A stretch of DNA of 64,000 nt from Schmidtea nova (lineage: Eukaryota), in assembly GCA_044892505.1 (NCBI GenBank), contig CM097884.1:86056001-86120000 (forward strand). The letters are read 5' to 3'. Of this stretch, positions 3,491-61,760 are shown piece after piece. Under the pieces are notes generated by a model that saw only the letters and a list, made by a program, of their open reading frames with translations, did not search any database and had not been told where the DNA came from. Every line of letters starts with the position of its first letter. Position 1 is the first letter of the stretch. A program made the position numbers and the translations under genes.

Positions 3491-4299
3491 AAATAAAACA
3501 TTAATAGAAAGACCGGAGCTTTTAGACTCAATATTTGATATATAACAGAGTCTCATGAGCATCTCGGAAGGGTCATAATCAAGATCGCAAATATTAAAAT
3601 TATTGGCTCTATTTATTTTGTGATAAACTTCATCATATTTCAAAATAGCCAGAATGCTATAAATAAAACACAAATCGTCGGAATTTATTACATTAACAGT
3701 AGAGTGCTTTTAAATTAAAGAATTAGGGGTATTAATGTGTCTTCGACCGCTTAAAGCCACAGCTTTTAGTCAAGACAAAATGGATTTCATTGAGTTTATT
3801 AATAACCTAATTATTCATCTTATCGTTTATTAAAGATATTTTCTTTCATTTAAAAGAGTAATGCTCTTATCTAAAGTTATGCCACTCACGAGTCTTGCAG
3901 AATTTGAAATATTGAATAATTAAAATTCACAATCTTTTTCAAATTATATGTCTATACAAAATTGTATTTTGACCATCCCCATTTCATTAATTACTTTGTA
4001 TAATTTATTTGTAAAAATTTCTGGTCAAATTAAAATTTCTAAATTAAGATCAGAAATAACCATTTTAACAATGGCGTTGTATAGCGTTAGGAAGAAAAGA
4101 ACCACCACATTGAACATCTATTAGGGAATTGTCGTCGGAAAAAAATGAATAAGTTATTGTAAGTAATGTATTCATCCGAAATGATAATTATTTCATTTAT
4201 TATAGTATAGTCAACTAAAGTATTAATTATATTATAAATGTGATGTGTTTTCGGTAGAGTTAAATATTTCAGATAATTTGCCTGAATATTTTAAAAAGA

Positions 4300-4523
4300 T
4301 TAATATCAATAATTCCCATAATGGTAAGACTATAGATCAAAATTTCTTTAAATAAGTACACAAAATTTTGACAGAGCCTTTATTAAGTGTGTATACACTT
4401 GATAAAGGCTGTGCCGAAATATTATGTACTTATTTAAAAAAATTGTAATCTATAGTCTTACTATTATAGGAATTATTGATATTAATATTAAAAAAGATCA
4501 AAGGTGAAACAAAAAGATAATTA
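4300..4523 (+). mobile_element. Hairpin-plus-tail element, copy 1
   Basis: ~100-bp inverted arms centred on CAGAGCCTTTATTAAGTGTGTA/TACACTTGATAAAGGCTGTG, plus an unpaired tail AAAGATCAAAGGTGAAACAAAAAGATAATTA; flanking duplication TGAATATTT(T)AAAAAGA. Confidence 0.8.
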
Positions 4524-19150: not shown

Positions 19151-20599
19151 GCCATGTACGTTGTCTTAATAATATTTTGTGATAAATTAATTTTAAGTTG
19201 AAATTGAATTATTGATAGACTTTTAAAATAAGAGAAAAATAATAACGCTAATGCATATGTTGTTTGTCTAAGAAAAATTCTACACTATGTATATACAGTC
19301 AATTTCATTTGTTTAACCTAAACTTTTTAAATGAGACAAATAAAAATAGAACTATATTTAGTTAGAATAATCAAATTAATAAGCATGAAAAGATTTTTGT
19401 CAAAAATAATTAAAGAAGCAGGAAAATAAATTAACACGTTTGCTAACTCGATCTAAGTTATATTACTGGATTTGTTATACGTATGTCTTGCGCTTTTGCG
19501 AAAGGGGTAAAATGGTGAATATTTATGCTACATGTATGAAAAAGATATAAAATAAAGAGGGATTCGGATAAGAAAAACACCTGTAATTTGAAATCGAAGA
19601 CTACTTATACATATAATTTATTTAAATATTTATTAAAAAATTATTATTAGTATTATTATTATTATAATTTTTATTTATTATTATAATTTTTTTTTAATTG
19701 TTATTTTATTTTTATTTTGTCATCAGCATTTTAAATAGAATTAATATTTTTAATATTTTTAGAATTTTAGAATTAGAATTTTTTTAATTTTAGAATTAAT
19801 ATTTTTTTAGAAAACTAGTTCATTTAGCATGTGATCAAGAAATAGAAATCAGATTTTATTCCTGTGACACTATCAATAAAAATTACACTATAAATCATGT
19901 CGGCAAATCTATCCAAAACATTTAATTAAATAATAATTAAATCAATTGTTTAATTAAAACTCTTTTTTTCAATTTATACCCTCATTTATTGACAATTACT
20001 TTATTAGATATGATTTATAAATTTGACGTTTTTATTTTCTACTATGCTCTTCCTTGATTAACTATTTGTAGTTTAATATCCTTTCTGTGGATCGCTATGT
20101 GATGTATTCTGTTACTATTGAATTTGTAATAAATAAAGGGCAAATTTTGCTTTGTTTTTATTTGTTTGTCGAAATTTTGTATTTACTTTGAACGTAGTCA
20201 GAAAATTAAATTTGTTTGAGAAATATTAAAAATATTATTAAACACTATTTAAAAATATATTTCTTAACAATATATCTAATTAAACAATTAAATAAAAATG
20301 GCAATTTATCCAAATAAATAAAAGAACACCATTTTTTAAAATTTTGTAATGCAAATATTATGACAGCTCAGCTGTCATCATCAAGCTTTAAACAAATTCA
20401 GTAAAATAAAAATTTATCTTATTTATACGCTTATTAGTGATTACATAATCACATGTGCAAATCCATTAAGTTTTTTATTTAACCCTAATAAAATTAATTA
20501 AAAACTCTCAAAATGCATGTAGTTATTGCATTTTGTATGTTTATTTTAGAATTAAATGATTTTATCATGAAAGCCTCACAATTCACACGTTCGTAATAA

Positions 20600-21540
20600 G
20601 TTTTTTAAACATCAGTCGTATCTGGATTGTTATAATAATAATTCAATAGTTTCTGTTGATCAGTCAAGAATAGTTAGTAAAGATCACCAACTCTTTACTT
20701 ATAAATCTTTTAAAATTGCTTTGACTAACCTCGATGTAAAATGACTTTAGATTTCTAAAAAAGAGAGTCTTGCTTATGGACATTATAGAGGAATCGATGT
20801 GGTTATGGCGGTGCGCGATGATGAAGCCAATGAAGCCGATGTTGAATTTGCTGATAAATAACATGGATTGACTCAAGTAGTTTATAATGATTATGTAATG
20901 ATTACGTACTATATACAATATTACATAATGCAGCATAGGTCTTAGTGTAGTGAGTTAAACTGCATAATTATTACGTATTATAAATGGATAAATGGATTGT
21001 GTCAGGCGGTTCACCTCTCCCTGCTACTTTTAGTGTTTCGAAATTTTCTATTGTCGCTGGTTAGTCTCATCTATTCTATACTATTCTGCAATGCCTAATT
21101 TTCTTATTGTCTCTAATTTGAATTCTGCCTAGTTCAGTTTAATTCATATTTGTCCATTTCTAATTATGTCTCTGTTTTTTGTATATTTTTCTTTTTAGCC
21201 TATTAATCGCAAACACTTATAGATAATTTCTCTGTTTTTGATTTCTGATTCCAGCTTATTCACTTGTTCATCCACAATTTCTCTATTATCTCAGACAGTT
21301 CTTGAGATACACAATTTTATTTGACTGCCTCTTTTTACTATTTCAACTTCCCTTGTTATACATTCGTTATCTTAGACAAACGGCCGAGATATGTAAATTC
21401 TGTCCTGACTTTGTTTTTGAATTCTTTTTTCCAATTTGTACTAGCTAACTACTCATGTCCTTTTTTGTTTTATTGTTGACTTGCTATTTTTTCTCTTTTT
21501 ATCAATTACTTCTCCTCACTCTTGCTATTAAGAATTTTGG
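20600..21540 (-). mobile_element. Degenerate member of the short LTR-like family
   Basis: Shares TTATCTxxGACAG motifs with 18289-19034; ends unclear. Confidence 0.3.
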
Positions 21541-21549
21541 AACTACATA

Positions 21550-22848
21550 CGTGGTGCGTTCAATAAGTACCCGACCAAAGGTAAAAAAATGTAATGACAA
21601 ATTTTAGTTTTTTTGTGTAAATAAATAAATAAATATAGGTTTTGATTTCAGTTATTGTTTTATTTTATCAAACGCATTAAAATTTTTATTGTGACATTTT
21701 GATTTTTCGTCGGTGTAATGATTTCAGACGTTGAGTATCGCAGCGTTATCAAGTTCTTTGTGTTGCAGAAGAAGACGTGCAGTGAAATCTACGATCTTTT
21801 GCAGTCAACTTACCTACATGACTCCCCATCTCTGACAATTGTTAAATATTGGGTCAGAGAGTTTAAAGGTGGTCGCACCTCTGTTTTTGATCAAGAAAAA
21901 TCAGGTCGGCCACAAGAAATCTTTGACACAGTTGATGAAAAATTGGAGAAGATTGTCCAAGAAGAGCGTCGAATCACCATGAAAATGCTGTCAACGAAGC
22001 TCAACATCAGTGTTGGTACAGCCCACGCCAAATTGAAATACATGGGTATCAGAAAACTGTGCTCCAGATTCGTACCCCGCTTCTTGACTGGTGAAATGAT
22101 GCGAAACCGCTTGGAGGGCAGTCAGAACAACTTGAACCTGTGGGACCAGCATGGTGAGACTTTCCTGGCAAATTTAATAACGGAGGATGAAACCCCACTC
22201 AGTATGTATTTGCCGGAAACAAAGCGTGAGTCAGCAGAGTGGAAACTGCCTGGAGAGAAGCCATTTTTGAAGATGCGAACGGAGACAAGTCATGGGCGAG
22301 CGATGATGCTTTCCATTTTCTGGGATCATAAAGGTGTTATTCTCATTGATTTCGCGGATAAAGGCATCACCATCAACGCTGCCTATTACAGCCAACTCGT
22401 GTCAACCGCCAGAAAGAATAGACGGAAGCAGAAGAATACGCCACTATGGTTTCTCCACGACAAAGCGCCAGTGCACACAGTGGGCGTTTCTCGGGCCACA
22501 ATTGAAGGTGCTGGATTAGTGCTTGTGGATCATCAGCCGTACAGCCCAGATTTGGCACCAAGCGATTTTTACCTCTTTAGACACCTAAAGAAGCATTTGA
22601 GAGGCACCCAGTTTGGATCCAAAGACGATTTGAAGGATGCCATGGAGGATTTCTTCAATGCATGTCCCCGAGATTTCTTCAAAAATGCGTTTTCTGAGTT
22701 GATTATTCGTTGGCGGAAGTGTGTGGAGCGAAATGGACATTATGTTGAAAAATGATGCCTACATACGTTAAGCTTGTTGTGTTATAAAAATGGCCCATTT
22801 TGGAATTCGTTTTCTTCGTCAGGTCGGGTACTTATTGAACACACTACG
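21550..22848 (+). mobile_element. Full-length mariner DNA transposon (1299 bp)
   Basis: 27-bp TIRs CGTGGTGCGTTCAATAAGTACCCGACC (2 mismatches) and TA TSDs. Confidence 0.97.
21718..22755 (+). CDS. Mariner transposase (DD34D), 345 aa, uninterrupted
   Basis: HTH N-terminus, FVPRFL (WVPHEL-like), TEDET, HDKA, HQPYSPDLAPSDF with 34 residues between the second and third catalytic Asp. Confidence 0.95.
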   Translation: MISDVEYRSVIKFFVLQKKTCSEIYDLLQSTYLHDSPSLTIVKYWVREFKGGRTSVFDQEKSGRPQEIFDTVDEKLEKIVQEERRITMKMLSTKLNISVGTAHAKLKYMGIRKLCSRFVPRFLTGEMMRNRLEGSQNNLNLWDQHGETFLANLITEDETPLSMYLPETKRESAEWKLPGEKPFLKMRTETSHGRAMMLSIFWDHKGVILIDFADKGITINAAYYSQLVSTARKNRRKQKNTPLWFLHDKAPVHTVGVSRATIEGAGLVLVDHQPYSPDLAPSDFYLFRHLKKHLRGTQFGSKDDLKDAMEDFFNACPRDFFKNAFSELIIRWRKCVERNGHYVEK

Positions 22849-38326: not shown

Positions 38327-38568
38327 TTAATATCAATAATTCCCATAATAGTAACACTATAAATCGAGATTTCTTTAAACAAGTACACACGATTTCGGCA
38401 CAGCCTTTATCAAGTGTGTAATACTTTATCAACTAATACACACTTGATAAAGGCTGTGCCAAAATATTATGTACGTGTTTAAAGAAATTTTGATCTATAG
38501 TCTTACCATTATGGGAATTATTGATATTACTAATAATAAAAGGTCAAAGGTGAAACAAAAAGATAATT
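38327..38568 (+). mobile_element. Hairpin-plus-tail element, copy 2
   Basis: Same arms and tail as copy 1; 16-nt loop; flanking duplication ATGATAATA(G/A)TAATA. Confidence 0.8.
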
Positions 38569-39159: not shown

Positions 39160-41005
39160 AACTCTCCCCTTCTTTAAGCATCATGTCACTTCTTTATTCA
39201 TTCTATTCTTCGTTGTTTAATAGTGTTTTTGTCTTCTAATTTCACTTGATGGGCTGATATAAATTTCTTTAATTTGTAGGGTCCTTCGTATTGCATCCAA
39301 TATTTTGTCCTTTTCTGCGGTTCTTTACGAACAAGCCCTTCCTCTCGATCTCAAAGTATCGTGTACCACGCTTTTTTAGATCTCTATTCTTCCTCGTTTC
39401 AGCAGCAGTTTTTGAGTTTTCTCTAACAGTTTCGATAACATCTTTAAATGGCTTTACTGGCGAAGAAATATTTGAATGGAGATTTTTTTTCCTACCATAA
39501 ATAATTTCAACGGTGAATTGTATATGTGTTGAATTGATACAAATTTCAATCTTCGGTAAAATTTCTAACCAATTTCTCTCTTCACTACTTCCAGCCTAAG
39601 ATGTGGTTATTAGATCTCTCTATGTCTTTATTATTCGCTCGGCAAGACCATTTAATTGATGTTAGTAAAGAGAACTCTTGAAGAATTCCAAATATTTCTA
39701 ATTTTTCCTTCCAAAATGTGCTTTCAAAATTTCTTTTTCTATCTGTTAATGTACTTTTAGGTTTTCCGAATTTGTATATCCACTGATTCAGCAAGATTTT
39801 GTAAATTGTTTTTTCATCCTGTTTTGAGGTGGCTGTTAGGCTTACTTGTTTTGTAAATCGATCTATTATTACTACTACATACTACTTCATTGCAAGTGAT
39901 TTCATATAAGCAATGTCGATAACTATCTGATCGAAAAACACTGTACTTGTTCGCGGTATTAGAATCTCTTTAGTCTGCTCTTGGTTTATTTTCGGCTTAG
40001 CGCATTCCACACATTTCTGTAGGCATTCTCTAATGGTAGCGTGCTTGTTTGGCCAATGGATAATATTTTGTAAGTGACGTATCAATTTCTTTACTCCGAC
40101 ATGACAAAGTTCTTGGTGAATTTCTTTAATGGGTACTGAACTGAAATTCTAAGGAACTAGTACTAAATCCAGTTCTTTCTTTTTGATCACTAGAAGGTTG
40201 TCCTCCACTTTTAAGTCATTCCTTAGTTTGTAAAGATAATCTTTTGGATCGAAATTTATCATGTTTTAACTTACATAATCGAGGTATTTCTTCATTTCCT
40301 GAAACTGTGTATCTTTTTGTTGCCCTTCTGTTACTTGTTTCATTGTTTCTGTTATCTACATTATGCAGATGTGTCTAACTCTGGATTTACTTTTCTTAGC
40401 ACTTTCGTGTCTCATTTGACATTGTGCACATACCATTCCCTTATCCTGGATAATCCATCAGCATTTGAATGATCTTCTCCTTTACGATATTAAAAGTTAT
40501 TCTGATAAATTTTCCATCCAGGTTTGAAATTGTGGGCTAATTGCTTGTTTTGTAGTATTCATAAATCTTTTCCCATACAGATATTACTTGAAGTAGCTCA
40601 CGTATTCGTATATAGCAAGTAGCTCTTTTCTTGTGACACACTATCCTTTTTCATGAGCTGATAAATGTCTAGATCCATATGCTACAACTGTCACGGTTCT
40701 ATTCTCTTTCAACTTGTTTAAAACAGCTCTAATAGCACCGAAACTGACATCTGTATCTAGAATAAAGATTAGGTTTTCTCTTGGATAATCCAATATCGGA
40801 GCTTCACACAATTTGCCTTTGAGGGTCTGAAAAGCATCTTCGAATTATTTTGTCCATGAAATTTTCTTCTCGCATCCCGTTATTGCTTGATAAAGCGGAG
40901 CTGCAATTTTTTCGATTTCTTTAATGAATCTTCTATAATTATTTGTCATTCCCAAGAATGATCGTAGTAGGGGATAGTGAGGTTTCAGAGCCACTTTTTT
41001 CAACT
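39160..41005 (-). pseudogene. Ty3/Gypsy pol remnant (RT connection, RNase H, integrase) with polypurine tract
   Basis: LRSFLGMTNNYRRFIK, LDTDVS, KELLAI, RKGEDHSNADGLSR, HQELCH..CVEC, IVIDIAY, GPYK; PPT AAAGAAGGGAGAG at ~39162-39175 followed by a putative LTR start TGTAAG. Confidence 0.85.
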
Positions 41006-42584: not shown

Positions 42585-42932
42585 TTAAGGTCATACCTTC
42601 AAAGGTCATTCAAGGTGCTCGACCCTCAATGGGTCAAAAACCTTAAAATCTTTTAAACCTTGCAAGTTATACATCATTCGAAAGTTATTTGAGAGGTAAG
42701 TATGATGATCATACCCTCAAAGGTTTATGTTTGCTCACAAACTTTCAAGGTGTCTCTAAACTTTAGAATCTTTAAAACCTTACAAGTTATATATCATTCA
42801 AAAGGGTCCAAGGTTAAAAGATTTTAAAACCTAATAATATACAGATCTTTTGAAAGGTATTTGAGAGGTGAGTATAATGGTCATACTTTTGAAGGTTATT
42901 GGTGGGTGCTAAACCTTCAAAGGATCAAAAAG

Positions 42933-42984
<52 letters not shown>

Positions 42985-43260
42985 AACTAAATGCAGTTGA
43001 ATGATACATATGATGGTCATACCCTCGAAAGATCCAAGGTTCAAAATTTTAAAACTTAATAATATAAATTTCAAACTATAGGAAATTGATAGATGAGTAT
43101 GATAGTCATAACCTCGATGGTGTGTGTGCGTTTGAAAAGAATTTCTACCCATATTTAAACAAAGACATTGCAATGTTAGTTAACATTGCAGGTGCAAGTT
43201 AACAAAGACATTCCAATGCAGATGCAAGTTATCAAAGACATTGCAATGCCCGTGCATCTT
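42585..43260 (+). repeat. Left arm of a long imperfect inverted repeat (putative Polinton TIR) with AAGGTC-rich subrepeats
   Basis: Reverse complement of ~49998-50570 (e.g. AAACAAAGACATTGCAATGCCCGTGCATC vs GATGCACGGGCATTGCAATGTCTTTGTTT). Confidence 0.65.
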
Positions 43261-46925: not shown

Positions 46926-47789
46926 TTTTAAAGAAATTGAAAATCTTTCAGATAATATATAATATCCCTATATAGACCATAGGATGTGTACCTAAAAACG
47001 ATGTTTGTGTGGTGTAATTGATTATTTAAAACAATAAATGTATTATTTATTATGTGTTTTATTATTTTTTATTATTAATTAAAATTATTATTATTTTGTT
47101 AAATATTATTATTTTGATAAATATTACTAGTCATGACAAAGCAGACAAAGACACGTGAGGTCATGTACCTTCATATTTTTGTCATGTCACATAACAACAA
47201 TCGTGACATCATACACATAAACAATCATGTAGTAAGTGTGCATGTATTTCTTTATCCTATCCCGATTCTGATTGGATGGTTAATAAAACTTGAAATATCT
47301 GCCTTTTTATAGTCTATACTTTCATTTTGTAGTCACTTTTAATCACAATTTTCAAATCATTCAATTTTTTTAAACAATTAATAAGATGAAAAATTTATCT
47401 ATCAATATGAAACTAAGAGTTGTTGAAGGACTTAATATTGACAATAAATTTCCAATACAAAAAAGGCCAGAAAAACATAGTGGCCTGTAAGCGCAGAGAA
47501 CATCTTTTTTGGGGGGGGTTAGAATTTTGATGTGCGCCAAAGGGCCATTAACCACCTACTTTTTATCATTATTAATTTTAGAAAATAACATGAAAAATGC
47601 CAAGGATGCTCAGGATGATGCAATCAACTTTTCGAATGTCCCAAATTTTACAGATTCTCTGACATTTTCTGATACTGCTTCTGCTGCCGTTGCTGTTGTG
47701 GATATTGATGTCTCGATTTATGCCACGAACAAATGTAATTTCTTTATAAAATATTTATATTATGTTCAATATTACCGATTTTAAGTTTT

Positions 47790-49290
47790 AGACGGTATCC
47801 CAATAAACTTGCTTTTGTTAGAAAATAAAAAAAAACATATCATTACTTCGCAATAACAGACAAATAATTTTTTAAATTGTAAAAATGATTGAATCTCTCC
47901 TCTCATAATTTTGAGTTAATGGTGTCTCAGATGTTTAAATGGCTTTAGGAATGACGACACTTTCGATTGTCATATAAATCTCTCTAAAACAATTCAGTTA
48001 GGTATAACAATGTACACCATTCCTACAAATAAATATCTTAAATTTGCTGACTGGAAGAAGGCTGTCACTCCTCTCTTTGTTATTTACACCAATTTCGAGG
48101 CAATTTTACCTAGAGATACTATGCATTTTCAAAATCACTTGCCTATTTCTGCTGGTTTGCTGCTTATTAATAATTTTACCGGTGTAAAGATTTAAAAATC
48201 TTTCATAGAACTAGATAGTGTTGATCAATTTCATAACGAAATTGAATTAATTAGTAAATATTTCGTGGATCCCTTTTATTAGAAAAACTATCAAAAGAAA
48301 ATGATTTTTTCTGATGCAGATAAAATTGTTTTTGATAATAGCACAAGATGTTACTTGTCTAAAAACCTGTTAATTAATCCTGTTTGCAATCATGACCATT
48401 TAACGGTCAATTTCTTGGAGCTGCTTGTTCTTCTTGTAATCGATCAAGACAAATTAAACATACCATTCCTGTCACCTTTTATAATTTCAAGGGTTATGAT
48501 CTACATCACATTTTAAAATTCGGATATCCAAAATATCATTCATGGAATATAAGCTGTATTCCCTTGACTAGTGAAAAGTTTCTCAGCCTTTTTGCTTATA
48601 TAGATTCTTTAATTGTAAAATTCATAGACTCTTATCATTTTGTCAGAGTCTTTAAATAATGCTGTCTGACTTCATTGCCTCTGATAGAATCTGAATTTAG
48701 GGCACAATCATTACTGCCAAGGGTATCTTTCCTTATGACACAGCGACTTCTTTAAAAGTTTTAAAAAAGACATTTTCTTTACTTCTTATCTGGAAAGACG
48801 CGAAGACAGCGTATACCAGTGCGTATACCTCAGGGCTTTATAAAGATATCAACAATTTATATGGCTGGGCTTTGAACCAGAGATTGCCTTGTGAAAATTT
48901 TGAATGGGTCACAGATGAAGCTTTAAGTCAGATTTTAATTGAATGCACTAAGGTAGATTTGGATGTACTTCATTATGGTTATACTATATGATGTAGATCT
49001 AGAAATACCGGCTTTGATTCACGACAAGCTAAACAATTTTCCAGTTACCGCAAAAAAAGATCTACATTCCAGGCTCGAAAGTGAAGAAGCTGTTGCTTAA
49101 GCACACGCCCAAGAAAAAATATGTTCATCATTGGAGGCTTCTCGCAACATTTATTAAATTAGATGTAAAAATTATCAAAATACATAGAGCAATCAAATTC
49201 ACAGAATAAATATTTGAAAACTCTGTTAACACTAATACGACGTTAAGAGCAGCATCTGGAAATAAATTGGATAAACATTATTGACATTAA
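47790..49290 (+). pseudogene. Protein-primed DNA polymerase B (Polinton)
   Basis: CLRCLNGF, VIYTNFEAIL (ExoI), HDHLT..GAACSSCN, FYNFKGYDLHHI (ExoII), KFIDSY, KGIFPYD, YKDINNLYGWA (Pol motif A), IHRAIKF; internal deletions. Confidence 0.9.
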
Positions 49291-49685
49291 TATTAAAAAA
49301 AAGATTAAAGGTGAANNNNNNNNNNNNNNNNNNNNNNNNNNNNNNNNNNNNNNNNNNNNNNNNNNNNNNNNNNNNNNNNNNNNNNNNNNNNNNNNNNNNN
49401 NNNNNNNNNNNNNNNNNNNNNNNNNNNNNNNNNNNNNNNNNNNNNNNNNNNNNNNNNNNNNNNNNNNNNNNNNNNNNNNNNNNNNNNNNNNNNNNNNNNN
49501 NNNNNNNNNNNNNNNNNNNNNNNNNNNNNNNNNNNNNNNNNNNNNNNNNNNNNNNNNNNNNNNNNNNNNNNNNNNNNNTATTCAAGTGATGTTTTATCCA
49601 GTGTACCAGGTATAGTATATAACAAAAATCTTTCGACTTTGTTTTATACTTACCTGGCGCGGAGAGAAATTTTCGCGTCTCCTGC

Positions 49686-49727
49686 ATAGCACTGATGAGA
49701 GCCATAAGCTCGAAACTAGTCTGCTAT
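49686..49727 (+). ncRNA. Type I hammerhead ribozyme (minimal stem III)
   Basis: ATAGCA-CTGATGA-GAGC-CATAA-GCTC-GAAA-CTAG-TC-TGCTAT: intact core, stem I (6 bp plus extension TCTCC/GGGGA), stem II 4 bp; predicted cleavage after C49721. Confidence 0.88.
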
Positions 49728-49997
49728 TGGGGATTTGCACTGGTTATCACAAAAAATCACAAGCTTTTTTTGTTTAAAACAAATAAGNNNNNNNNNNNNN
49801 NNNNNNNNNNNNNNNNNNNNNNNNNNNNNNNNNNNNNNNNNNNNNNNNNNNNNNNNNNNNNNNNNNNNNNNNNNNNNNNNNNNNNNNNNNNNNNNNNNNN
49901 NNNNNNNNNNNNNNNNNNNNNNNNNNNNNNNNNNNNNNNNNNNNNNNNNNNNNNNNNNNNNNNNNNNNNNNNNNNNNNNNNNNNNNNNNNNNNNNNN

Positions 49998-50428
49998 GAT
50001 GCACGGGCATTGCAATGTCTTTGTTTAAATAGGGGTAGGATTTTTTTCCAAACACACACATACATCATCGAGGTTATGACTATCATACTCATCTATCAAT
50101 TACCTTTAGTTTGGTATGTATATTATTAGGTTTTAAAATTTTGAACCTTAGACCTACGAACCTACTATTAAAAGTCCTTTTGAATGACATATAACTGGTA
50201 ATGTTTAAAATATTTTTAAGTTTATAGACATCTTGAAGGTCTTTGACTAACCACAAACCTTTGAGGACATGACCATCATACTCACCACTCAAATACCTTT
50301 CAAATGATATATAACATGTAAGGTTTAAATGATTGTAAGGTTTTTAACTCTTTGAAGGTCGTGCATCCATCATAGACCTTCGAATGTATGACCATCATAA
50401 TTACCCTTCAATTACCTTTTGATTAATA

Positions 50429-50461
<33 letters not shown>

Positions 50462-50570
50462 TGTAAGGTTTAAAAAAATTTAAAGGTCCAGGACCCTCCA
50501 TAAACCATCGAGAGTATGACCGTTGTATAGACCTCTCAAAGACCTTGTGTGAAGGTTTGACTTTATTTGA
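49998..50570 (-). repeat. Right arm of the long imperfect inverted repeat
   Basis: See 42585-43260. Confidence 0.65.
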
Positions 50571-51181: not shown

Positions 51182-52306
51182 CCCTGGTCTACCAAAAGTC
51201 TCCATTCTGGCACCTATTTACATATTGCAATTTATAATGAACAACAATGGGAACAAATGTAACAAATACACACGAATACTGAATGTCTATAGTGCTGAGA
51301 GAGTTAGTACTTTGTTATATTACCTTTCATCTGGATAACAAGGTGCACTCGTTTAAACATTTTATCGACAACCTTTGCCTGGAAATAAGGGGAGATGTGT
51401 GACCATTCCTCATGCAGATGCGTTTCTAGTTCGGAGGTGTTACGGGCAATGGAAATCATTTTGCGAACTCCTCTACCAAGACGTCCCACAAAAACTCATT
51501 AAAATTCAGATCAGGGCTTTGTGGAACACAATCCAAAACGTTGATGCTGTGCTGCAGAAAGAATTCCTTCATAATGTGCGAAGTATGGATTGGTGCATTA
51601 CCATGTTGGTAAATGAGCCCCTCAATTTCTGGGAGAAAGGGAACAAGCTCATTTTCCAGAATGGCACGGTATTCCACTGACATCATGTGATTGACGCACT
51701 TCACTAGAGGACCAGTTCTACAAACTGAGAAAAGACTCCAAAACATGACGGAGCCTCCTCCAAATTTTACAGTTGGCTGAATGCAGTCAAGGTGAAATCG
51801 TTCTCCTACACGACGCCAGAAGAATTGCTGTCCATCCGATTTGAAAAGAGTGAAACGTGATTCATCACTCAAAATGACTGAGCGCCTGAATGTTGGTTGT
51901 TGACATGTATTTGATCTTGGTGGTATTTTCTCAGGAAGTAGTTAATAGTTCTTTTGGGATGGTCAGTCAATGCAGCAGTTTCACTCTGACTTTTTACACA
52001 AAAGTATAATCCTAAAAGATTGCCTTTCTGAACGTCTGTAAGCTCTCTCCGAGTAGTCATATTCTAAAAAAGTGACAATCCTTCATTAAAATGACTCACT
52101 GTTATCACTGTTGTGTCTCTGGTGTGAGTATTCATATTCTGTGTGTGTGTGAGTGCGTGCGTGCGTAATTGTGCGCATGAAGCATGTTGAAGGTGTTGGT
52201 GACCATTGTTCTCATTGCTGTTCATATTTGCACTGCAGATGTTCATTATAAACTGCAATATGTAAATAACTGCCTTACTGGAGACTTTTGGTAGGCCTGA
52301 GTAGGG
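51182..52306 (-). mobile_element. Degenerate Tc1-like transposon
   Basis: ~65-bp TIRs (..CTACCAAAAGTCTCCA..TATTTACATATTGCA), TA flanks; HTH, SDESRF, VKFGGGSVMFW, QHGNAPIHT and SPDLNFNE motifs; frameshifted. Confidence 0.88.
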
Positions 52307-56442: not shown

Positions 56443-56655
56443 CATAATTATCTTTTTTCACCTTTGATCTTTTTTTATTATTATTATCAATAATTCTCAT
56501 AATGACTATAGATCAAAATTTTTTTTTTATAAACAATAACACAATATTTCGGCACAGCCTTTACACTTGATAAAGGCTGTGCCGAAATATTGTGTTATTG
56601 TTTATAAAAAAAAAATTTTGATCTATAGCCATTATGAGAATTATTGATAATAATA
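56443..56655 (-). mobile_element. Hairpin-plus-tail element, copy 3
   Basis: Opposite orientation; perfect 14-bp TSD ACAATAAATTTTAT (56429-56442 and 56656-56669). Confidence 0.85.
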
Positions 56656-57545: not shown

Positions 57546-57731
57546 CATAATGGATGACTATAGATCAAATATTTTTAAATAAGTACACGATATTTCGGCA
57601 CAGCCTTTATCAAATACACACTTGATAAAGGCTGTGCCGAAATATCGTGTACTTATTTATAAAGATTTTGATCTATAGTCATCCATTATGAAAATTATTG
57701 ATATTAATAATAAAAAAAGATCAAAGGTGAA
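57546..57731 (+). mobile_element. Hairpin-plus-tail element, copy 4 (gap on both sides)
   Basis: Same arms and start of the tail (AAAGATCAAAGGTGAA). Confidence 0.8.
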
Positions 57732-59169: not shown

Positions 59170-61760
59170 TCGGAGTGAGAATGGAAGTAGGTGTGGCAGT
59201 CAGAGTAGAATAGGGGTAAGAGAGGATATGAGGATGGGAGTGGGACAGGCAGTAAACTTGTTAGCTGCACTCGATGTGTAAGTGAGTAAGTGTGAGGATC
59301 ATAGGATAATGTATAGCAGAATGCAAAGTAGACCAAGTGTTAAGCTGAATATAAAAGGTTGTAAAGTAGATTGCTTATTAGATTCAAGAACCCGAGTGAA
59401 CGTAATAGCAAAAGCAGTTGTGGATAAATTAGTTAAAGTAGAAATAAGCAAAACGGATGAGTTGTTAAAATTTGCGAATAATAGGAAACTAGAAACCTTA
59501 AGTAAGTTATACACTGAAGTTAAAATTGGCGATGTAGAAATAAAATTAATTAAATAAAATTTATTGTTGTTAAAAATGTTGTTCCAGAGATAATTGGAGG
59601 ATTTGAAATACAAAAAGCATTTGCAAACAGATCATAATGCAATAAATATCTATTTCAATATCACCTTTATGTTGATTATCTATATTACATATAATACCTT
59701 TATGTTGACAACAAAGAATCCAATAGCAGCACAATTTCAAACGTGGATCAATCATTTATGCACCTTGGGGATAACGATCGAATATAGAAAAGGAACTGAT
59801 CACGCAAATGCGGATATACTTTTAAGGAAATCACGAGGAACATGTATACAATGCATAATGGAACACTTAAAACAGAAAAGCGGACGAGTACGAACAAGGC
59901 GACTGATCATATATAATAAGTTCTGGGCAATCCAAAGGAGCCGGACATTCGGGCAATTGCTTGCATTGATACGATTTATCGCAATCAGTCGATTCATCGT
60001 AATCAGACATTTTTTCGCAATCAAACGATTTTTCACAATCAAGCGATTTTTCGCAATCAGGCGAATTTTCGCAATCAGGTGATTTTTCGCAATCAGGTGA
60101 TTTTTCACAATCAGGCGATTTTTCACAATCAGGCGATTTTTCACAATCAGGCGATTTTTCGCAATCAGGGGATTTTTCATCAACCGACGCTTCTGGTGTC
60201 GAATTAGGCCATTGCTTTGGATGATCGTCCTCCTCGTCTATTTTTTGCAATTTCTTGCAATCCATTTCGAATTGGTTGAGGGCGTTCCGTAACACCCAGA
60301 TACGATACTTTTGTATGCGGTCCATACAATGACCGCATTGGTAGGCGCACAAGATGTGCTCCGCCATATATGGCATTTCACTGTCCCGATTAGCCAGGGG
60401 ATTGAGCAAGACCTGGTGAACATCGATCCCAGTCAAGCATTGGATTTTGTAGGGAATCAGTTCCGGTGCCGTATAGGTCAGCTTGGGCATCAGCATCGGA
60501 TAGATTTCTTCAAGCTTGCCGTAAAGTACGGAGATCAATTTCTCTAAAATAAAAAAAATTATAAAAATGAAAAAATAGTAAACTTTAAAATTTACCATAT
60601 TTCATTATATCGGACATTTTTTGATTGTGAATATAAATGATTGCAAAATGTTCATTGTATATATATGATAGAAACACAAGGCATGTACAAAATATTACAC
60701 ACTGAACCAATCAGATTCGAGTATGCATAACATGTCTTTATTATCGAAATACACATTGGACCAAGACAGCATAAATAAGTGACAAAATAATAATGATGAG
60801 ATAAAAGAAATAAAGAATGAAAATGAAGAGTTCAAGAACGGAAGATTCATAATGAAGGAGAAAACGATATATACAAGCAAGAACAAACTCTGGATAGCAA
60901 AATTGAAAATACGAGATATGATCAAGGAAACACATTTAATGTCATGTCATGCAGGAATAAAAAAAGTGACAAACTATATCCAACACGATTTCGACATGGA
61001 AAATTTGGTAAAAAATGTAAAATCAGTAATTGAAAACTGTATTGCATGTCAAAAAACGAAGACTTACCATAAAGGCAAAAAAAAGAAACTAAAACAGTCA
61101 TAAGTGTGGAACCTTTTGAGATTATCTTTATGGAAATATGTGGACCAATGAAAGAAGCAATCGATCGAGAAAGATACACATGTGGTATCATTGACCAATA
61201 AAGTTAATGCATTTCTCTGTCTGTTATAGCTAAACAAGATGAACAAACAATATTGAAAACTTTGTTAAACAAAAGATATTGAGATTTGGAGCACCGAAAG
61301 AACTGCATGTAAACTGTGGGGAATGTTTTGAGTCAAACGGTGTAAAAAGATTGACAAAGTCAACAGGAATCAAAATAGTGTTTTCAAGCTAATATCACCA
61401 TAACACTAATCGATTAATAGAAAGACAGTTTCGTGCAATCAGAGATTATATTAACGCGTCGTTAAGAGAACAAAGCAAAAATAGTTGGGCAGAGAAATTA
61501 CTGGAAATTAGATATACTTTGAATACAACGATAGAGAAAACAATCGAGGTATAGCAGTGCTTCAATAAATAAAGCAAATGGAAACGGAAGCAACAAACGC
61601 AAAAGAGATGAAAACAATAAGAAAATTCAATTTAGGAGATACTGTTTAATAAAGGGTGTGATTCGAAATAAAGACAAAATACGATTTGAAGGACCTTACA
61701 CTTAAATAAAGAAAATTCACAAAAGAAGCTTTTTGTTAAGATATGAAGAAGGTAAAATCA
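59170..61760 (+). pseudogene. Ty3/Gypsy remnant (protease, RNase H end, integrase) with an internal foreign insert
   Basis: CLLDSRTRVNVI (aspartic protease), TDHNA, QFQTWINHL, RKGTDHANAD, HLMSCHAG..CIAC, EICGPM and RFEGPY; RT deleted. Confidence 0.85.
59867..60617 (-). CDS. Two-exon gene of unknown function with EKSPDC repeats
   Basis: Exon 1 60617-60596 (MSDIMKY+G) splices in frame over a 52-nt GT..AG intron (60595-60544) to exon 2 (EKLISVL..). 18-bp repeats at ~59990-60180; TATA-like ~60657-60666 and CCAAT 60707-60711 upstream. Confidence 0.65.

What the first reader, a model, noticed from the sequence alone, without database searches (positions are those of the whole stretch)
49586..49750. 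Hammerhead ribozyme embedded in a compact ~165-nt multibranch RNA between two gaps
Seen: closing helices GTGAT/ATCAC and CCAGTGTA/TGCACTGG enclose a long hairpin (49606-49657), a GAAA tetraloop hairpin (CGCGGAGA-GAAA-TTTTCGCG) and a type I hammerhead with extended, internally looped stem I and palindromic ACTAGT at stem III. Known: such minimal hammerheads occur in Penelope-like pLTRs and metazoan retrozymes, cleave as dimers and give circular RNAs from tandem arrays. Inference: the gaps on both sides may hide a tandem array; this could be a retrozyme/PLE unit inserted in the Polinton polymerase.
Basis: partly seen in the sequence, partly recalled or inferred. Interest (0 to 1): 0.8.

Follow-up and report, generated by a model that had tools for sequence, protein, structure and literature searches.

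The report
Lone hammerhead ribozyme unit between gaps
A 209-base island between two runs of N holds a convincing self-cleaving hammerhead ribozyme of the ordinary animal type inside a tightly folded RNA, most likely one unit of a small ribozyme-bearing retroelement. Only this one copy is visible, so its family, its repeat structure and its supposed insertion into a virus-like polymerase gene remain unproven.

Summary
At 49686-49727 (+) there is a complete type I hammerhead: helix I 6 bp, CUGAUGA, helix II 4 bp, GAAA, one or two helix III pairs inside the palindrome ACUAGU, and C17 at 49721. It sits in a 165-nt multibranch fold of -59.9 kcal/mol (z -5.96). A descriptor of this architecture hit once in the window and never in 20 Mb of composition-matched random sequence.

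Rfam scores are below threshold (Hammerhead_1 24.4 bits against 34). Tandem-repeated hammerheads with the same helix III, taken from metagenomes, also fall below that threshold.

The architecture is the canonical metazoan one found in non-LTR retrozymes and amphibian satellites. It is not the Penelope-type minimal variant.

No second copy was found in the window or in the metagenome and prokaryote collections. The island shows no internal period up to 197 nt. No Penelope RT or endonuclease was detected.

Homology to a protein-primed polymerase (47788-49281, decayed) stops before the left N run and does not resume after the right one. "Inserted in the Polinton polymerase" is therefore not shown.

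Verdict: probably a new member of a known kind. Interest is modest.

The parts
49579..49787 (+). Sequence island between two N runs that carries the whole feature. 36% G+C against about 28% for the window.
49586..49750 (+). 165-nt multibranch RNA domain: two closing helices enclosing three arms.
   Evidence: RNAfold -59.9 kcal/mol, z -5.96; helix list and pair probabilities
49606..49657 (+). Long imperfect hairpin, arm 1 (7+6+6+2 bp).
49658..49677 (+). 8-bp hairpin capped by a GAAA tetraloop, arm 2. Its two G.U pairs exist only on the + strand.
49680..49733 (+). Type I hammerhead ribozyme, arm 3. Helix I distal 49680-83/49730-33; 2x2 internal loop; helix I proximal 49686-91/49722-27; core CUGAUGA 49692-98; helix II 49699-49711; GAAA 49712-15; helix III palindrome 49715-20.
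   Evidence: Rfam Hammerhead_1 24.4 bits, full model; Hammerhead_HH9 22.7 bits at 49673-49744; own descriptor
49721..49722 (+). Predicted self-cleavage site, between C17 (49721) and U1.1 (49722).
   Evidence: Position in the core as aligned by Rfam; inference, no cleavage data
49316..49578 (.). N run of 263 bases on the left of the island. Not read, not filled.
49788..49997 (.). N run of 210 bases on the right of the island. Not read, not filled.
47788..49281 (+). Neighbour, not part of the RNA: decayed internal fragment of a protein-primed family B DNA polymerase gene of Polinton/Maverick type. About four frame changes, two to nine in-frame stops depending on the comparator, and both ends missing.
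49277..49315 (+). Neighbour: the end of a palindromic MITE-like repeat, abutting the left N run. Fuller copies lie at 4290-4509, 56457-56650 (-) and 57546-57731.
49998..50546 (.). Neighbour: block of ~120-nt tandem units abutting the right N run. An inverted copy lies at 42616-43258.

Best explanation
The island carries one unit, or part of one unit, of a small non-autonomous hammerhead-bearing retroelement of the metazoan non-LTR retrozyme kind. These are themselves thought to derive from Penelope-like pLTRs.

Proposed mechanism. When the + strand is transcribed, helices I and II fold locally. Helix III alone is too weak: one A-U pair plus a CUAG loop. The active site is therefore completed when two units pair through the palindrome ACUAGU, either neighbouring units in one transcript or two transcripts. 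Each core then cuts after C49721 and leaves 5'-OH and 2',3'-cyclic phosphate ends. Where two cuts release a monomer, a host tRNA ligase would circularise it. The compact multibranch fold would stabilise that RNA.

Shown here: the motif, its architecture, its non-random nature, the fold, and the energetic feasibility of the dimer.

Inferred from the literature: cleavage, circularisation, retrotransposition, and family membership.

The copy seen here may well be a solitary or dead one.
For: - Complete core and helices.
- The descriptor found 1 hit in the window and 0 in 20 Mb of random sequence.
- Helix I of 6 bp and helix II of 4 bp, with G10.1-C11.1 and no extra base after A9, is the canonical metazoan type I as defined in PMC4209133.
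- A helix III of one pair with a palindromic tetraloop is described for amphibian and axolotl retrozyme hammerheads, which need dimers (PMC7229834).
- The fold is highly self-paired (z -5.96) and G+C is 36%. [quoted passage not shown]
- Six G.U pairs and an 8 kcal/mol advantage favour the + strand as the RNA strand.
- The active swapped dimer evaluates at -35.8 kcal/mol, against -34.0 for two monomer minimum-energy folds and -30.4 for two active-like monomers.
- Hammerheads with the same core and helix III sit in 490-730-nt direct repeats on six metagenome contigs.
- Where such repeats were detected by Rfam (L063 only), they scored 29.7 bits, below the Rfam gathering score; the other five contigs gave no hammerhead match at E<=1. 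The low score here is therefore no argument against a real hammerhead.
Against: - Only one copy is visible. There is no second copy in 64 kb.
- A pattern specific for this hammerhead has no match in the metagenome or prokaryote genome collections.
- The relaxed-pattern hits share nothing with the island outside the 30-nt core.
- No predicted peptide from the island's longest open frame exists in the protein collection.
- No tandem structure is visible, with no period up to 197 nt. If their sizes are right, the N runs leave room for about one more unit per side.
- There is no covariation evidence, because there are no relatives.
- There are no expression or cleavage data.
- Rfam curated thresholds are not met.
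- The loop 1 / loop 2 tertiary-contact nucleotides could not be checked against a consensus.
Confidence: 0.55

Rival explanations
1. The island is a fragment of a pseudo-LTR of a Penelope-like element, where a hammerhead would process the element's tandem transcript.
For: - All examined Penelope-like elements with endonuclease, except Naiad and Chlamys, carry hammerheads in their pLTRs, including the cnidarian 'Hydra' clade (PMC4209133, PMC8557442).
- Most genomic hammerheads of that kind are solitary remnants of truncated elements (PMC4209133).
- A palindromic helix III is shared.
- Animal retrozymes are argued to derive from pLTRs (bioRxiv 10.64898/2026.07.22.740005), so this reading and the best explanation overlap.
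Against: - No RT or GIY-YIG domain was found among the open frames scanned with Pfam (about 50, of 73 aa or more).
- The defining traits of the metazoan minimal pLTR hammerhead are absent: helix II of 6-8 bp, an unpaired base between A9 and 10.1, and helix I of 4-5 bp.
Confidence: 0.2
2. The motif is a dead relic, or a real but functionless copy. It was once part of a mobile RNA element and is now untranscribed junk in a region built from transposon debris, with nothing cleaved today.
For: - The surroundings are a patchwork of decayed elements: polymerase fragments, MITE-like repeats, minisatellite blocks, integrase and transposase pieces.
- It is a single copy.
- Solitary monomers are common for retrozyme families and are thought unable to transpose (bioRxiv 10.64898/2026.07.22.740005).
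Against: Every core position and all helices are intact, with several G.U pairs specific to the + strand. That is unexpected after long neutral decay at 72% A+T.
Confidence: 0.18
3. Chance resemblance: an A+T-rich hairpin-rich stretch that happens to match the hammerhead consensus.
For: - The window-wide Rfam E-value is only 0.4, or about 0.16 when rescaled from the island scan.
- Many windows were scanned by the first stage.
- The minus strand folds almost as well.
Against: - 0 descriptor hits in 20 Mb of matched random sequence, and about 1e-4 expected per window.
- The helix lengths are exactly the canonical 6 and 4 bp, with G10.1-C11.1, A15.1-U16.1, C17 and an internal loop at the canonical distance.
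Confidence: 0.04
4. The ribozyme belongs to the Polinton-like element itself, for example processing a polymerase transcript.
For: It lies on the same strand as the polymerase remnant and less than 0.4 kb downstream of where that homology ends.
Against: - The polymerase remnant is broken and truncated at both ends.
- A MITE-like repeat end and an N run separate the two.
- No hammerhead is known to me in such elements. This rests on my own knowledge and was not tested.
Confidence: 0.03

Closest known systems
Metazoan non-LTR retrozymes (Cervera and de la Pena 2020, PMC7229834)
   Same: Canonical type I hammerhead; low G+C; strongly self-paired small RNA. The size of the visible domain (165 nt, island 209 nt) is near the lower end of the reported 170-400 nt.
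   Different: Retrozymes are defined by multi-copy head-to-tail repeats of 150-450 bp and by abundant linear and circular RNAs. Here one copy is visible, no repeat period is seen, and there are no RNA data.
Amphibian satellite 2 / axolotl HHR_Amex1 hammerheads
   Same: Helix III reduced to a single pair capped by a palindromic tetraloop, implying action as a dimer (PMC7229834).
   Different: Those sit in 330-350-bp repeats present in tens of thousands of copies. There is no sequence similarity beyond the core, and the conserved loop 1 / loop 2 contacts could not be checked here.
Minimal hammerheads of Penelope-like element pLTRs (Cervera and de la Pena 2014, PMC4209133)
   Same: Type I topology; palindromic positions around helix III; presumed dimeric action; frequent solitary genomic copies.
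   Different: The pLTR variants have a long helix II (6-8 bp), an unpaired base after A9 and a short helix I (4-5 bp), and they flank an RT-GIY-YIG gene. None of these is seen here.
Rfam Hammerhead_1 (RF00163) and Hammerhead_HH9 (RF02275)
   Same: Full-length alignment to both models, with all core positions matching.
   Different: Scores of 24.4 and 22.7 bits lie below the gathering scores of 34 and 52. The main reason is that the models expect a real helix III.

Membership tests
Hammerhead ribozyme, type I | Conserved core: C3 U4 G5 A6 N7 G8 A9, G12 A13 A14, and H17 at the cleavage site | tested here: met
   CUGAUGA 49692-98, GAAA 49712-15, C 49721
Hammerhead ribozyme, type I | Helices I and II flanking the core with helix I open-ended; G10.1-C11.1 and A15.1-U16.1 pairs | tested here: met
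   Helix I 6 bp plus 4 bp distal, helix II 4 bp starting with G-C, A49715-U49720
Hammerhead ribozyme, type I | A stable helix III | tested here: not met
   Only one or two pairs within ACUAGU. Forcing the single pair costs +5.7 kcal/mol in the monomer. A 6-bp helix III forms only in a dimer.
Hammerhead ribozyme, type I | Rfam curated gathering score | tested here: not met
   24.4 bits against 34; no hit at gathering level. Control: tandem-repeated hammerheads with the same helix III score 29.7 bits or are not listed.
Hammerhead ribozyme, type I | Self-cleavage at the predicted site | not testable with these tools
   No RNA data available
Metazoan non-LTR retrozyme | Canonical type I hammerhead (helix I 6 bp, helix II 4 bp, short palindromic helix III) | tested here: met
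   definition from PMC4209133 and PMC7229834
Metazoan non-LTR retrozyme | Head-to-tail tandem repeats of 150-450 bp in multiple copies | tested here: inconclusive
   No period up to 197 nt inside the island and no second copy in the window. Both sides are N runs, and the host genome could not be searched.
Metazoan non-LTR retrozyme | Low G+C and a highly self-paired predicted RNA | tested here: met
   36% G+C; z -5.96
Metazoan non-LTR retrozyme | [quoted passage not shown] | not testable with these tools
   No transcriptome access
Penelope-like element pLTR hammerhead | Lies in direct repeats flanking an RT-GIY-YIG reading frame | tested here: not met
   No RT or GIY-YIG hit in about 50 open frames of the window. 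Short decayed pieces could be missed.
Penelope-like element pLTR hammerhead | Long helix II (6-8 bp) with an unpaired base after A9, and short helix I (4-5 bp) | tested here: not met
   Helix II 4 bp, no extra base, helix I 6 bp
   The remnant at 47788-49281 aligns in three frames to 1100-1370-aa homologues (best E 3e-50). One of these carries Pfam DNA_pol_B_2, and one is named DNA-directed DNA polymerase.
   There is no polymerase homology between 49282 and 52000. The missing C-terminal ~280-300 residues exceed what 473 N positions could hold.
   No family hit in 43.3-47.7 kb. The integrase pieces at 39272-40148 are of the H2C2+rve kind. Inverted minisatellite blocks at 42616-43258 and 49998-50546 could be termini or unrelated.

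The most novel reading that the evidence does not exclude
The 165-nt four-way-junction domain (hammerhead, GAAA-tetraloop hairpin and long hairpin, closed by a long-range helix) is the complete functional core of an unusually small, previously undescribed retrozyme-like family. It would sit at or below the lower size limit known for animal ribozyme circles, and might be specific to this A+T-rich host.
Probability: 0.1. Interest if true: 0.45.

Novelty: new member of a known kind. Interest (0 to 1): 0.25.

Why it matters
Hammerheads of this architecture are already known in thousands of copies in many animal genomes. One more copy changes little. It would matter somewhat if a genome-wide census showed a family of very small, compact units (about 200 nt). 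That would extend the lower size range of animal ribozyme circles and give a clean, small model for how the extra arms stabilise or regulate the ribozyme. The finding also shows how a short scaffold island between N runs can suggest an 'insertion' that the visible sequence does not support.

Tried and rejected
1. Rfam at gathering thresholds on the whole window gave nothing. Only the permissive scans list the hammerhead.
2. Search for a second copy. blastn of 49000-50300 against the window gave none for the island. The specific pattern had 0 matches in metagenome contigs and 0 in genome contigs. The relaxed pattern matched 91 metagenome contigs, none related outside the core.
3. An 'ORF trick': the longest open frame of the island was searched as a peptide, to catch predicted peptides from other copies. 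There were no candidates. Further frames were not tried because of cost.
4. Finding the host genome through the intact mariner transposase (21718-22755): not on record. The organism stays unidentified; the closest named polymerase hit is from a firefly at 48% identity, which does not name the host.
5. Pfam on single polymerase pieces gave nothing. PDB sequence searches of one polymerase piece and two unannotated reading frames gave nothing.
6. tRNA-like or SINE-like origin: ARAGORN found no tRNA in the window. A Pol III box resemblance seen by eye was too weak and was dropped.
7. Viral contigs was deliberately not scanned, by pattern or by protein, because a match could fetch a virus of animals.
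8. The N runs were neither filled nor looked up. I only noted that the repeats touching their outer edges have paralogues in the window.
9. Supplementary alignments of the 2014 Penelope-hammerhead paper are not held, so no direct sequence comparison with published families was possible.

Full report
**The sequence.** The window is 64 kb at about 28% G+C, with six N runs. The finding lies on a 209-nt island, 49579-49787, between N runs of 263 and 210 bases. I did not fill these runs or look them up.

**The observation.**
- 49586-49591 pairs with 49745-49750.
- 49598-49605 pairs with 49736-49743 (8 bp, one G.U).
- These two helices enclose a long hairpin (49606-49657), an 8-bp hairpin with a GAAA loop (49658-49677) and a hammerhead arm (49680-49733).
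- The 165-nt stretch folds at -59.9 kcal/mol against -36.3 +/- 4.0 for dinucleotide shuffles (z -5.96, 0 of 200 shuffles as good). Pair probabilities are mostly 0.8-1.0; the exception is the last pair of proximal helix I at 0.47, and the distal helix I was not scored in register.
- The reverse strand also folds well (-51.7, z -5.6), as expected for hairpin-rich DNA. The + strand is 8 kcal/mol better and uses six G.U pairs that would be A.C mismatches on the other strand.
- The outermost helix is ambiguous. ATCAC occurs twice, and the fold of the whole island uses the second copy.

**The hammerhead.** Read directly, and as aligned by Rfam:
- helix I proximal 49686-49691/49722-49727 (6 bp);
- a 2x2 internal loop, then 4 more pairs (49680-83/49730-33);
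- CUGAUGA 49692-98;
- helix II 49699-49702/49708-49711 (4 bp, first pair G-C, 5-nt loop);
- GAAA 49712-15;
- A49715-U49720 closing CUAG, so that 49715-49720 is the palindrome ACUAGU;
- C17 = 49721.

**Is it chance?**
- Rfam alone is not decisive. There is nothing at gathering level. Hammerhead_1 scores 24.4 bits against a threshold of 34, E 5e-4 for the 210-nt scan. In the whole-window permissive scan the site appears as Hammerhead_HH9 at 22.7 bits, E 0.4.
- I wrote a descriptor: helix I of at least 5 pairs, CUGANGA, helix II of at least 3 pairs, GAAA, a palindromic helix III and H17. It finds exactly this site in the window and none in 20 Mb of random sequence with the window's dinucleotide content. 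A composition-based estimate for the observed 6 bp / 4 bp version is about 1e-4 per window (my calculation).
- As a control for the low Rfam score, I scanned eight metagenome contigs in which hammerheads with the same core and helix III lie in direct repeats. The best reach only 29.7 bits and most are not listed at all. A sub-threshold score is therefore normal for this short-helix-III class.

**What kind of hammerhead.**
- PMC4209133 defines the canonical metazoan type I motif as helix I 6 bp, helix II 4 bp, and helix III of 1-2 bp capped by a small palindromic loop. It defines the Penelope pLTR 'minimal' variants by a long helix II (6-8 bp), an unpaired base after A9 and a short helix I (4-5 bp).
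- The present motif is canonical on all three counts.
- PMC7229834 describes the single-pair helix III with a palindromic tetraloop for amphibian satellite and axolotl retrozyme hammerheads, and reports that such motifs need a dimeric arrangement for good cleavage.
- In silico, a domain-swapped dimer of 49678-49735 with a 6-bp intermolecular helix III evaluates at -35.8 kcal/mol. Two monomer minimum-energy folds give -34.0, and two active-like monomers without helix III give -30.4. The dimer route is therefore energetically open. Whether it is used is inference.

**Other copies.**
- There is none in the window.
- A pattern covering proximal helix I, the core and helix III has no match in the metagenome collection or the prokaryote genome collection.
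- A relaxed core pattern returned 91 metagenome contigs. None resembles the island outside about 30 nt of core.
- Of 102 motifs on those contigs, 62 have helix I of at least 4 pairs and helix II of at least 3 pairs. Six contigs carry the motif in 490-730-nt direct repeats of 80-99% identity. These illustrate the retrozyme-like setting of this hammerhead type, but they are not relatives of this unit.
- A peptide search with the island's longest open frame, meant to catch gene calls on other copies, found no candidate.
- The host genome could not be identified or searched.

**Tandem array?**
- The island shows no self-period from 60 to 197 nt. Any repeat unit must therefore exceed about 200 nt.
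- If the N lengths are real sizes, there is room for about one more unit on each side.
- The outer edge of the left N run is the end of a palindromic MITE-like repeat (49277-49315). Fuller copies lie at 4290-4509, 56457-56650 (-) and 57546-57731.
- The outer edge of the right N run is a block of ~120-nt tandem units (49998-50546), with an inverted copy at 42616-43258.
- Both N runs therefore abut other repeats. That fits assembly breaks in repeats, and it makes the placement of a 209-nt island uncertain.

**The polymerase.**
- A 96-residue open piece upstream hit 94 proteins at E of 1e-3 or better in the representative library.
- The two top hits match in 7-9 stretches. One of them clusters with a Ruminococcus glycosidase, so I take them as low-complexity artefacts.
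- The 819-aa hit P0004 carries Pfam DNA_pol_B_2 (E 1.5e-27), and the match lies inside that domain. P0005 is named a DNA-directed DNA polymerase of a firefly.
- tblastn of fourteen such proteins against the window places the remnant at 47788-49281 on the + strand, in all three frames. It corresponds to roughly residues 300-930 of 1150-1370-aa homologues.
- The gene is broken. There are about four frame changes, and two to nine in-frame stops depending on the comparator. The N-terminal about 300-450 residues and the C-terminal about 280-300 residues are missing.
- Homology does not resume after the second N run. The island is thus next to a truncated polymerase remnant, on one side only. 'Inserted in the polymerase' is not shown.
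- Two further small polymerase-like fragments lie elsewhere (3494-3766 on the minus strand, 20589-20789 on the plus strand). I compared them separately and joined nothing.

**Penelope-like element?** Pfam scans of about 50 open frames of 73 residues or more found no RT or GIY-YIG domain. They found only a mariner transposase, a DDE_3 fragment and two H2C2/rve integrase fragments. Short decayed pieces could be missed.

**Conclusion.** The motif is a real, intact-looking canonical type I hammerhead inside a compact structured RNA domain. The best reading (0.55) is one unit of a retrozyme-like, hammerhead-bearing non-autonomous retroelement. It may be solitary or inactive. The overlapping rival is a Penelope pLTR fragment (0.2). 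A dead relic (0.18), chance (0.04) and a Polinton-borne ribozyme (0.03) follow. This is a new member of a known kind and its interest is modest.

**Transparency.**
- The generic open-frame listings I used to obtain query bounds necessarily show where open frames end inside the polymerase remnant. I compiled no list of breaks, built no joined, repaired or consensus reading, and my later scripts printed only counts and outer bounds.
- None of these was entered in a tool or used as evidence.
- Viral contigs was not scanned, so as to avoid fetching an animal virus.
- Three metagenome contigs that look like circular ribozyme-bearing replicons (L015, L018, L039) arrived with the pattern scan. I examined them only for length, terminal overlap and open-frame sizes, and did not follow them.

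Noticed in passing
window 4290-4509 (+), 56457-56650 (-), 57546-57731 (+, cut by N on both sides), 49277-49315 (end only): A family of palindromic MITE-like elements of about 190-220 nt with a shared terminal motif. Their hairpins give near-threshold Rfam miRNA-precursor hits on both strands (mir-31 model 49.4 bits against 51). I take these as hairpin artefacts, not miRNA genes. Two N runs start right after the same terminal motif.
   Followed up: partly
window 42616-43258 and 49998-50546: Two inverted blocks of ~120-nt tandem units plus (TA)n, 72-93% complementary. They bracket about 6.7 kb that contains the polymerase remnant and the island. The right block reaches the very edge of the N run. 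They could be termini of a deleted Polinton-like element or unrelated minisatellites.
   Followed up: partly
window 3494-3766 (-) and 20589-20789 (+): Two further short fragments homologous to protein-primed polymerases. One is an N-terminal-side piece and one a C-terminal-end piece, far from the main remnant and on different strands. The region is a mosaic of element debris.
   Followed up: partly
window 21718-22755 (+): Intact 345-aa mariner/Mos1-type transposase reading frame (Transposase_1, DDE_3, HTH_48). Its exact product is not on record in the gene-position index.
   Followed up: partly
window 39272-40148 (-) and 60783-61100 (+): Integrase fragments (Integrase_H2C2 and rve) of the kind usual in LTR retroelements. 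A DDE_3 transposase fragment lies at 51459-51941 (-).
   Followed up: no
window 49751-49787: Directly after the structured domain come an A6 run, a second ATCAC, and a T7 run (49768-49774). On the + strand the T7 run would read as a Pol III-type terminator. Not tested.
   Followed up: no
L015, L018, L039 (metagenome contigs of 3.1-4.4 kb): Contigs with 100% identical terminal overlaps of about 126 nt, each overlap holding a hammerhead, plus large open frames (728-1061 aa and 304-357 aa) on the same strand. They look like circular ribozyme-bearing replicons assembled past their ends. Host unknown; deliberately not pursued.
   Followed up: no
L026, L049, L051, L063, L069, L032 (metagenome contigs of about 1 kb): Hammerheads with the same core and helix III as the finding, in direct repeats of 490-730 nt (80-99% identical, 40-44% G+C, no long open frames). 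These are retrozyme-like or viroid-like repeats from environmental eukaryotes.
   Followed up: partly
window 48701-48988, translated: The polymerase piece contains a short repetitive Tyr/Thr/Ser-rich stretch. It draws many-stretch matches to unrelated long proteins (P0001, P0002). The two best E-values are therefore misleading.
   Followed up: yes
window 38383-38474: A strong hairpin giving sub-threshold miRNA-model hits on both strands (mir-3688 model, 45.8 and 41.8 bits against 84). Probably another palindromic repeat.
   Followed up: no
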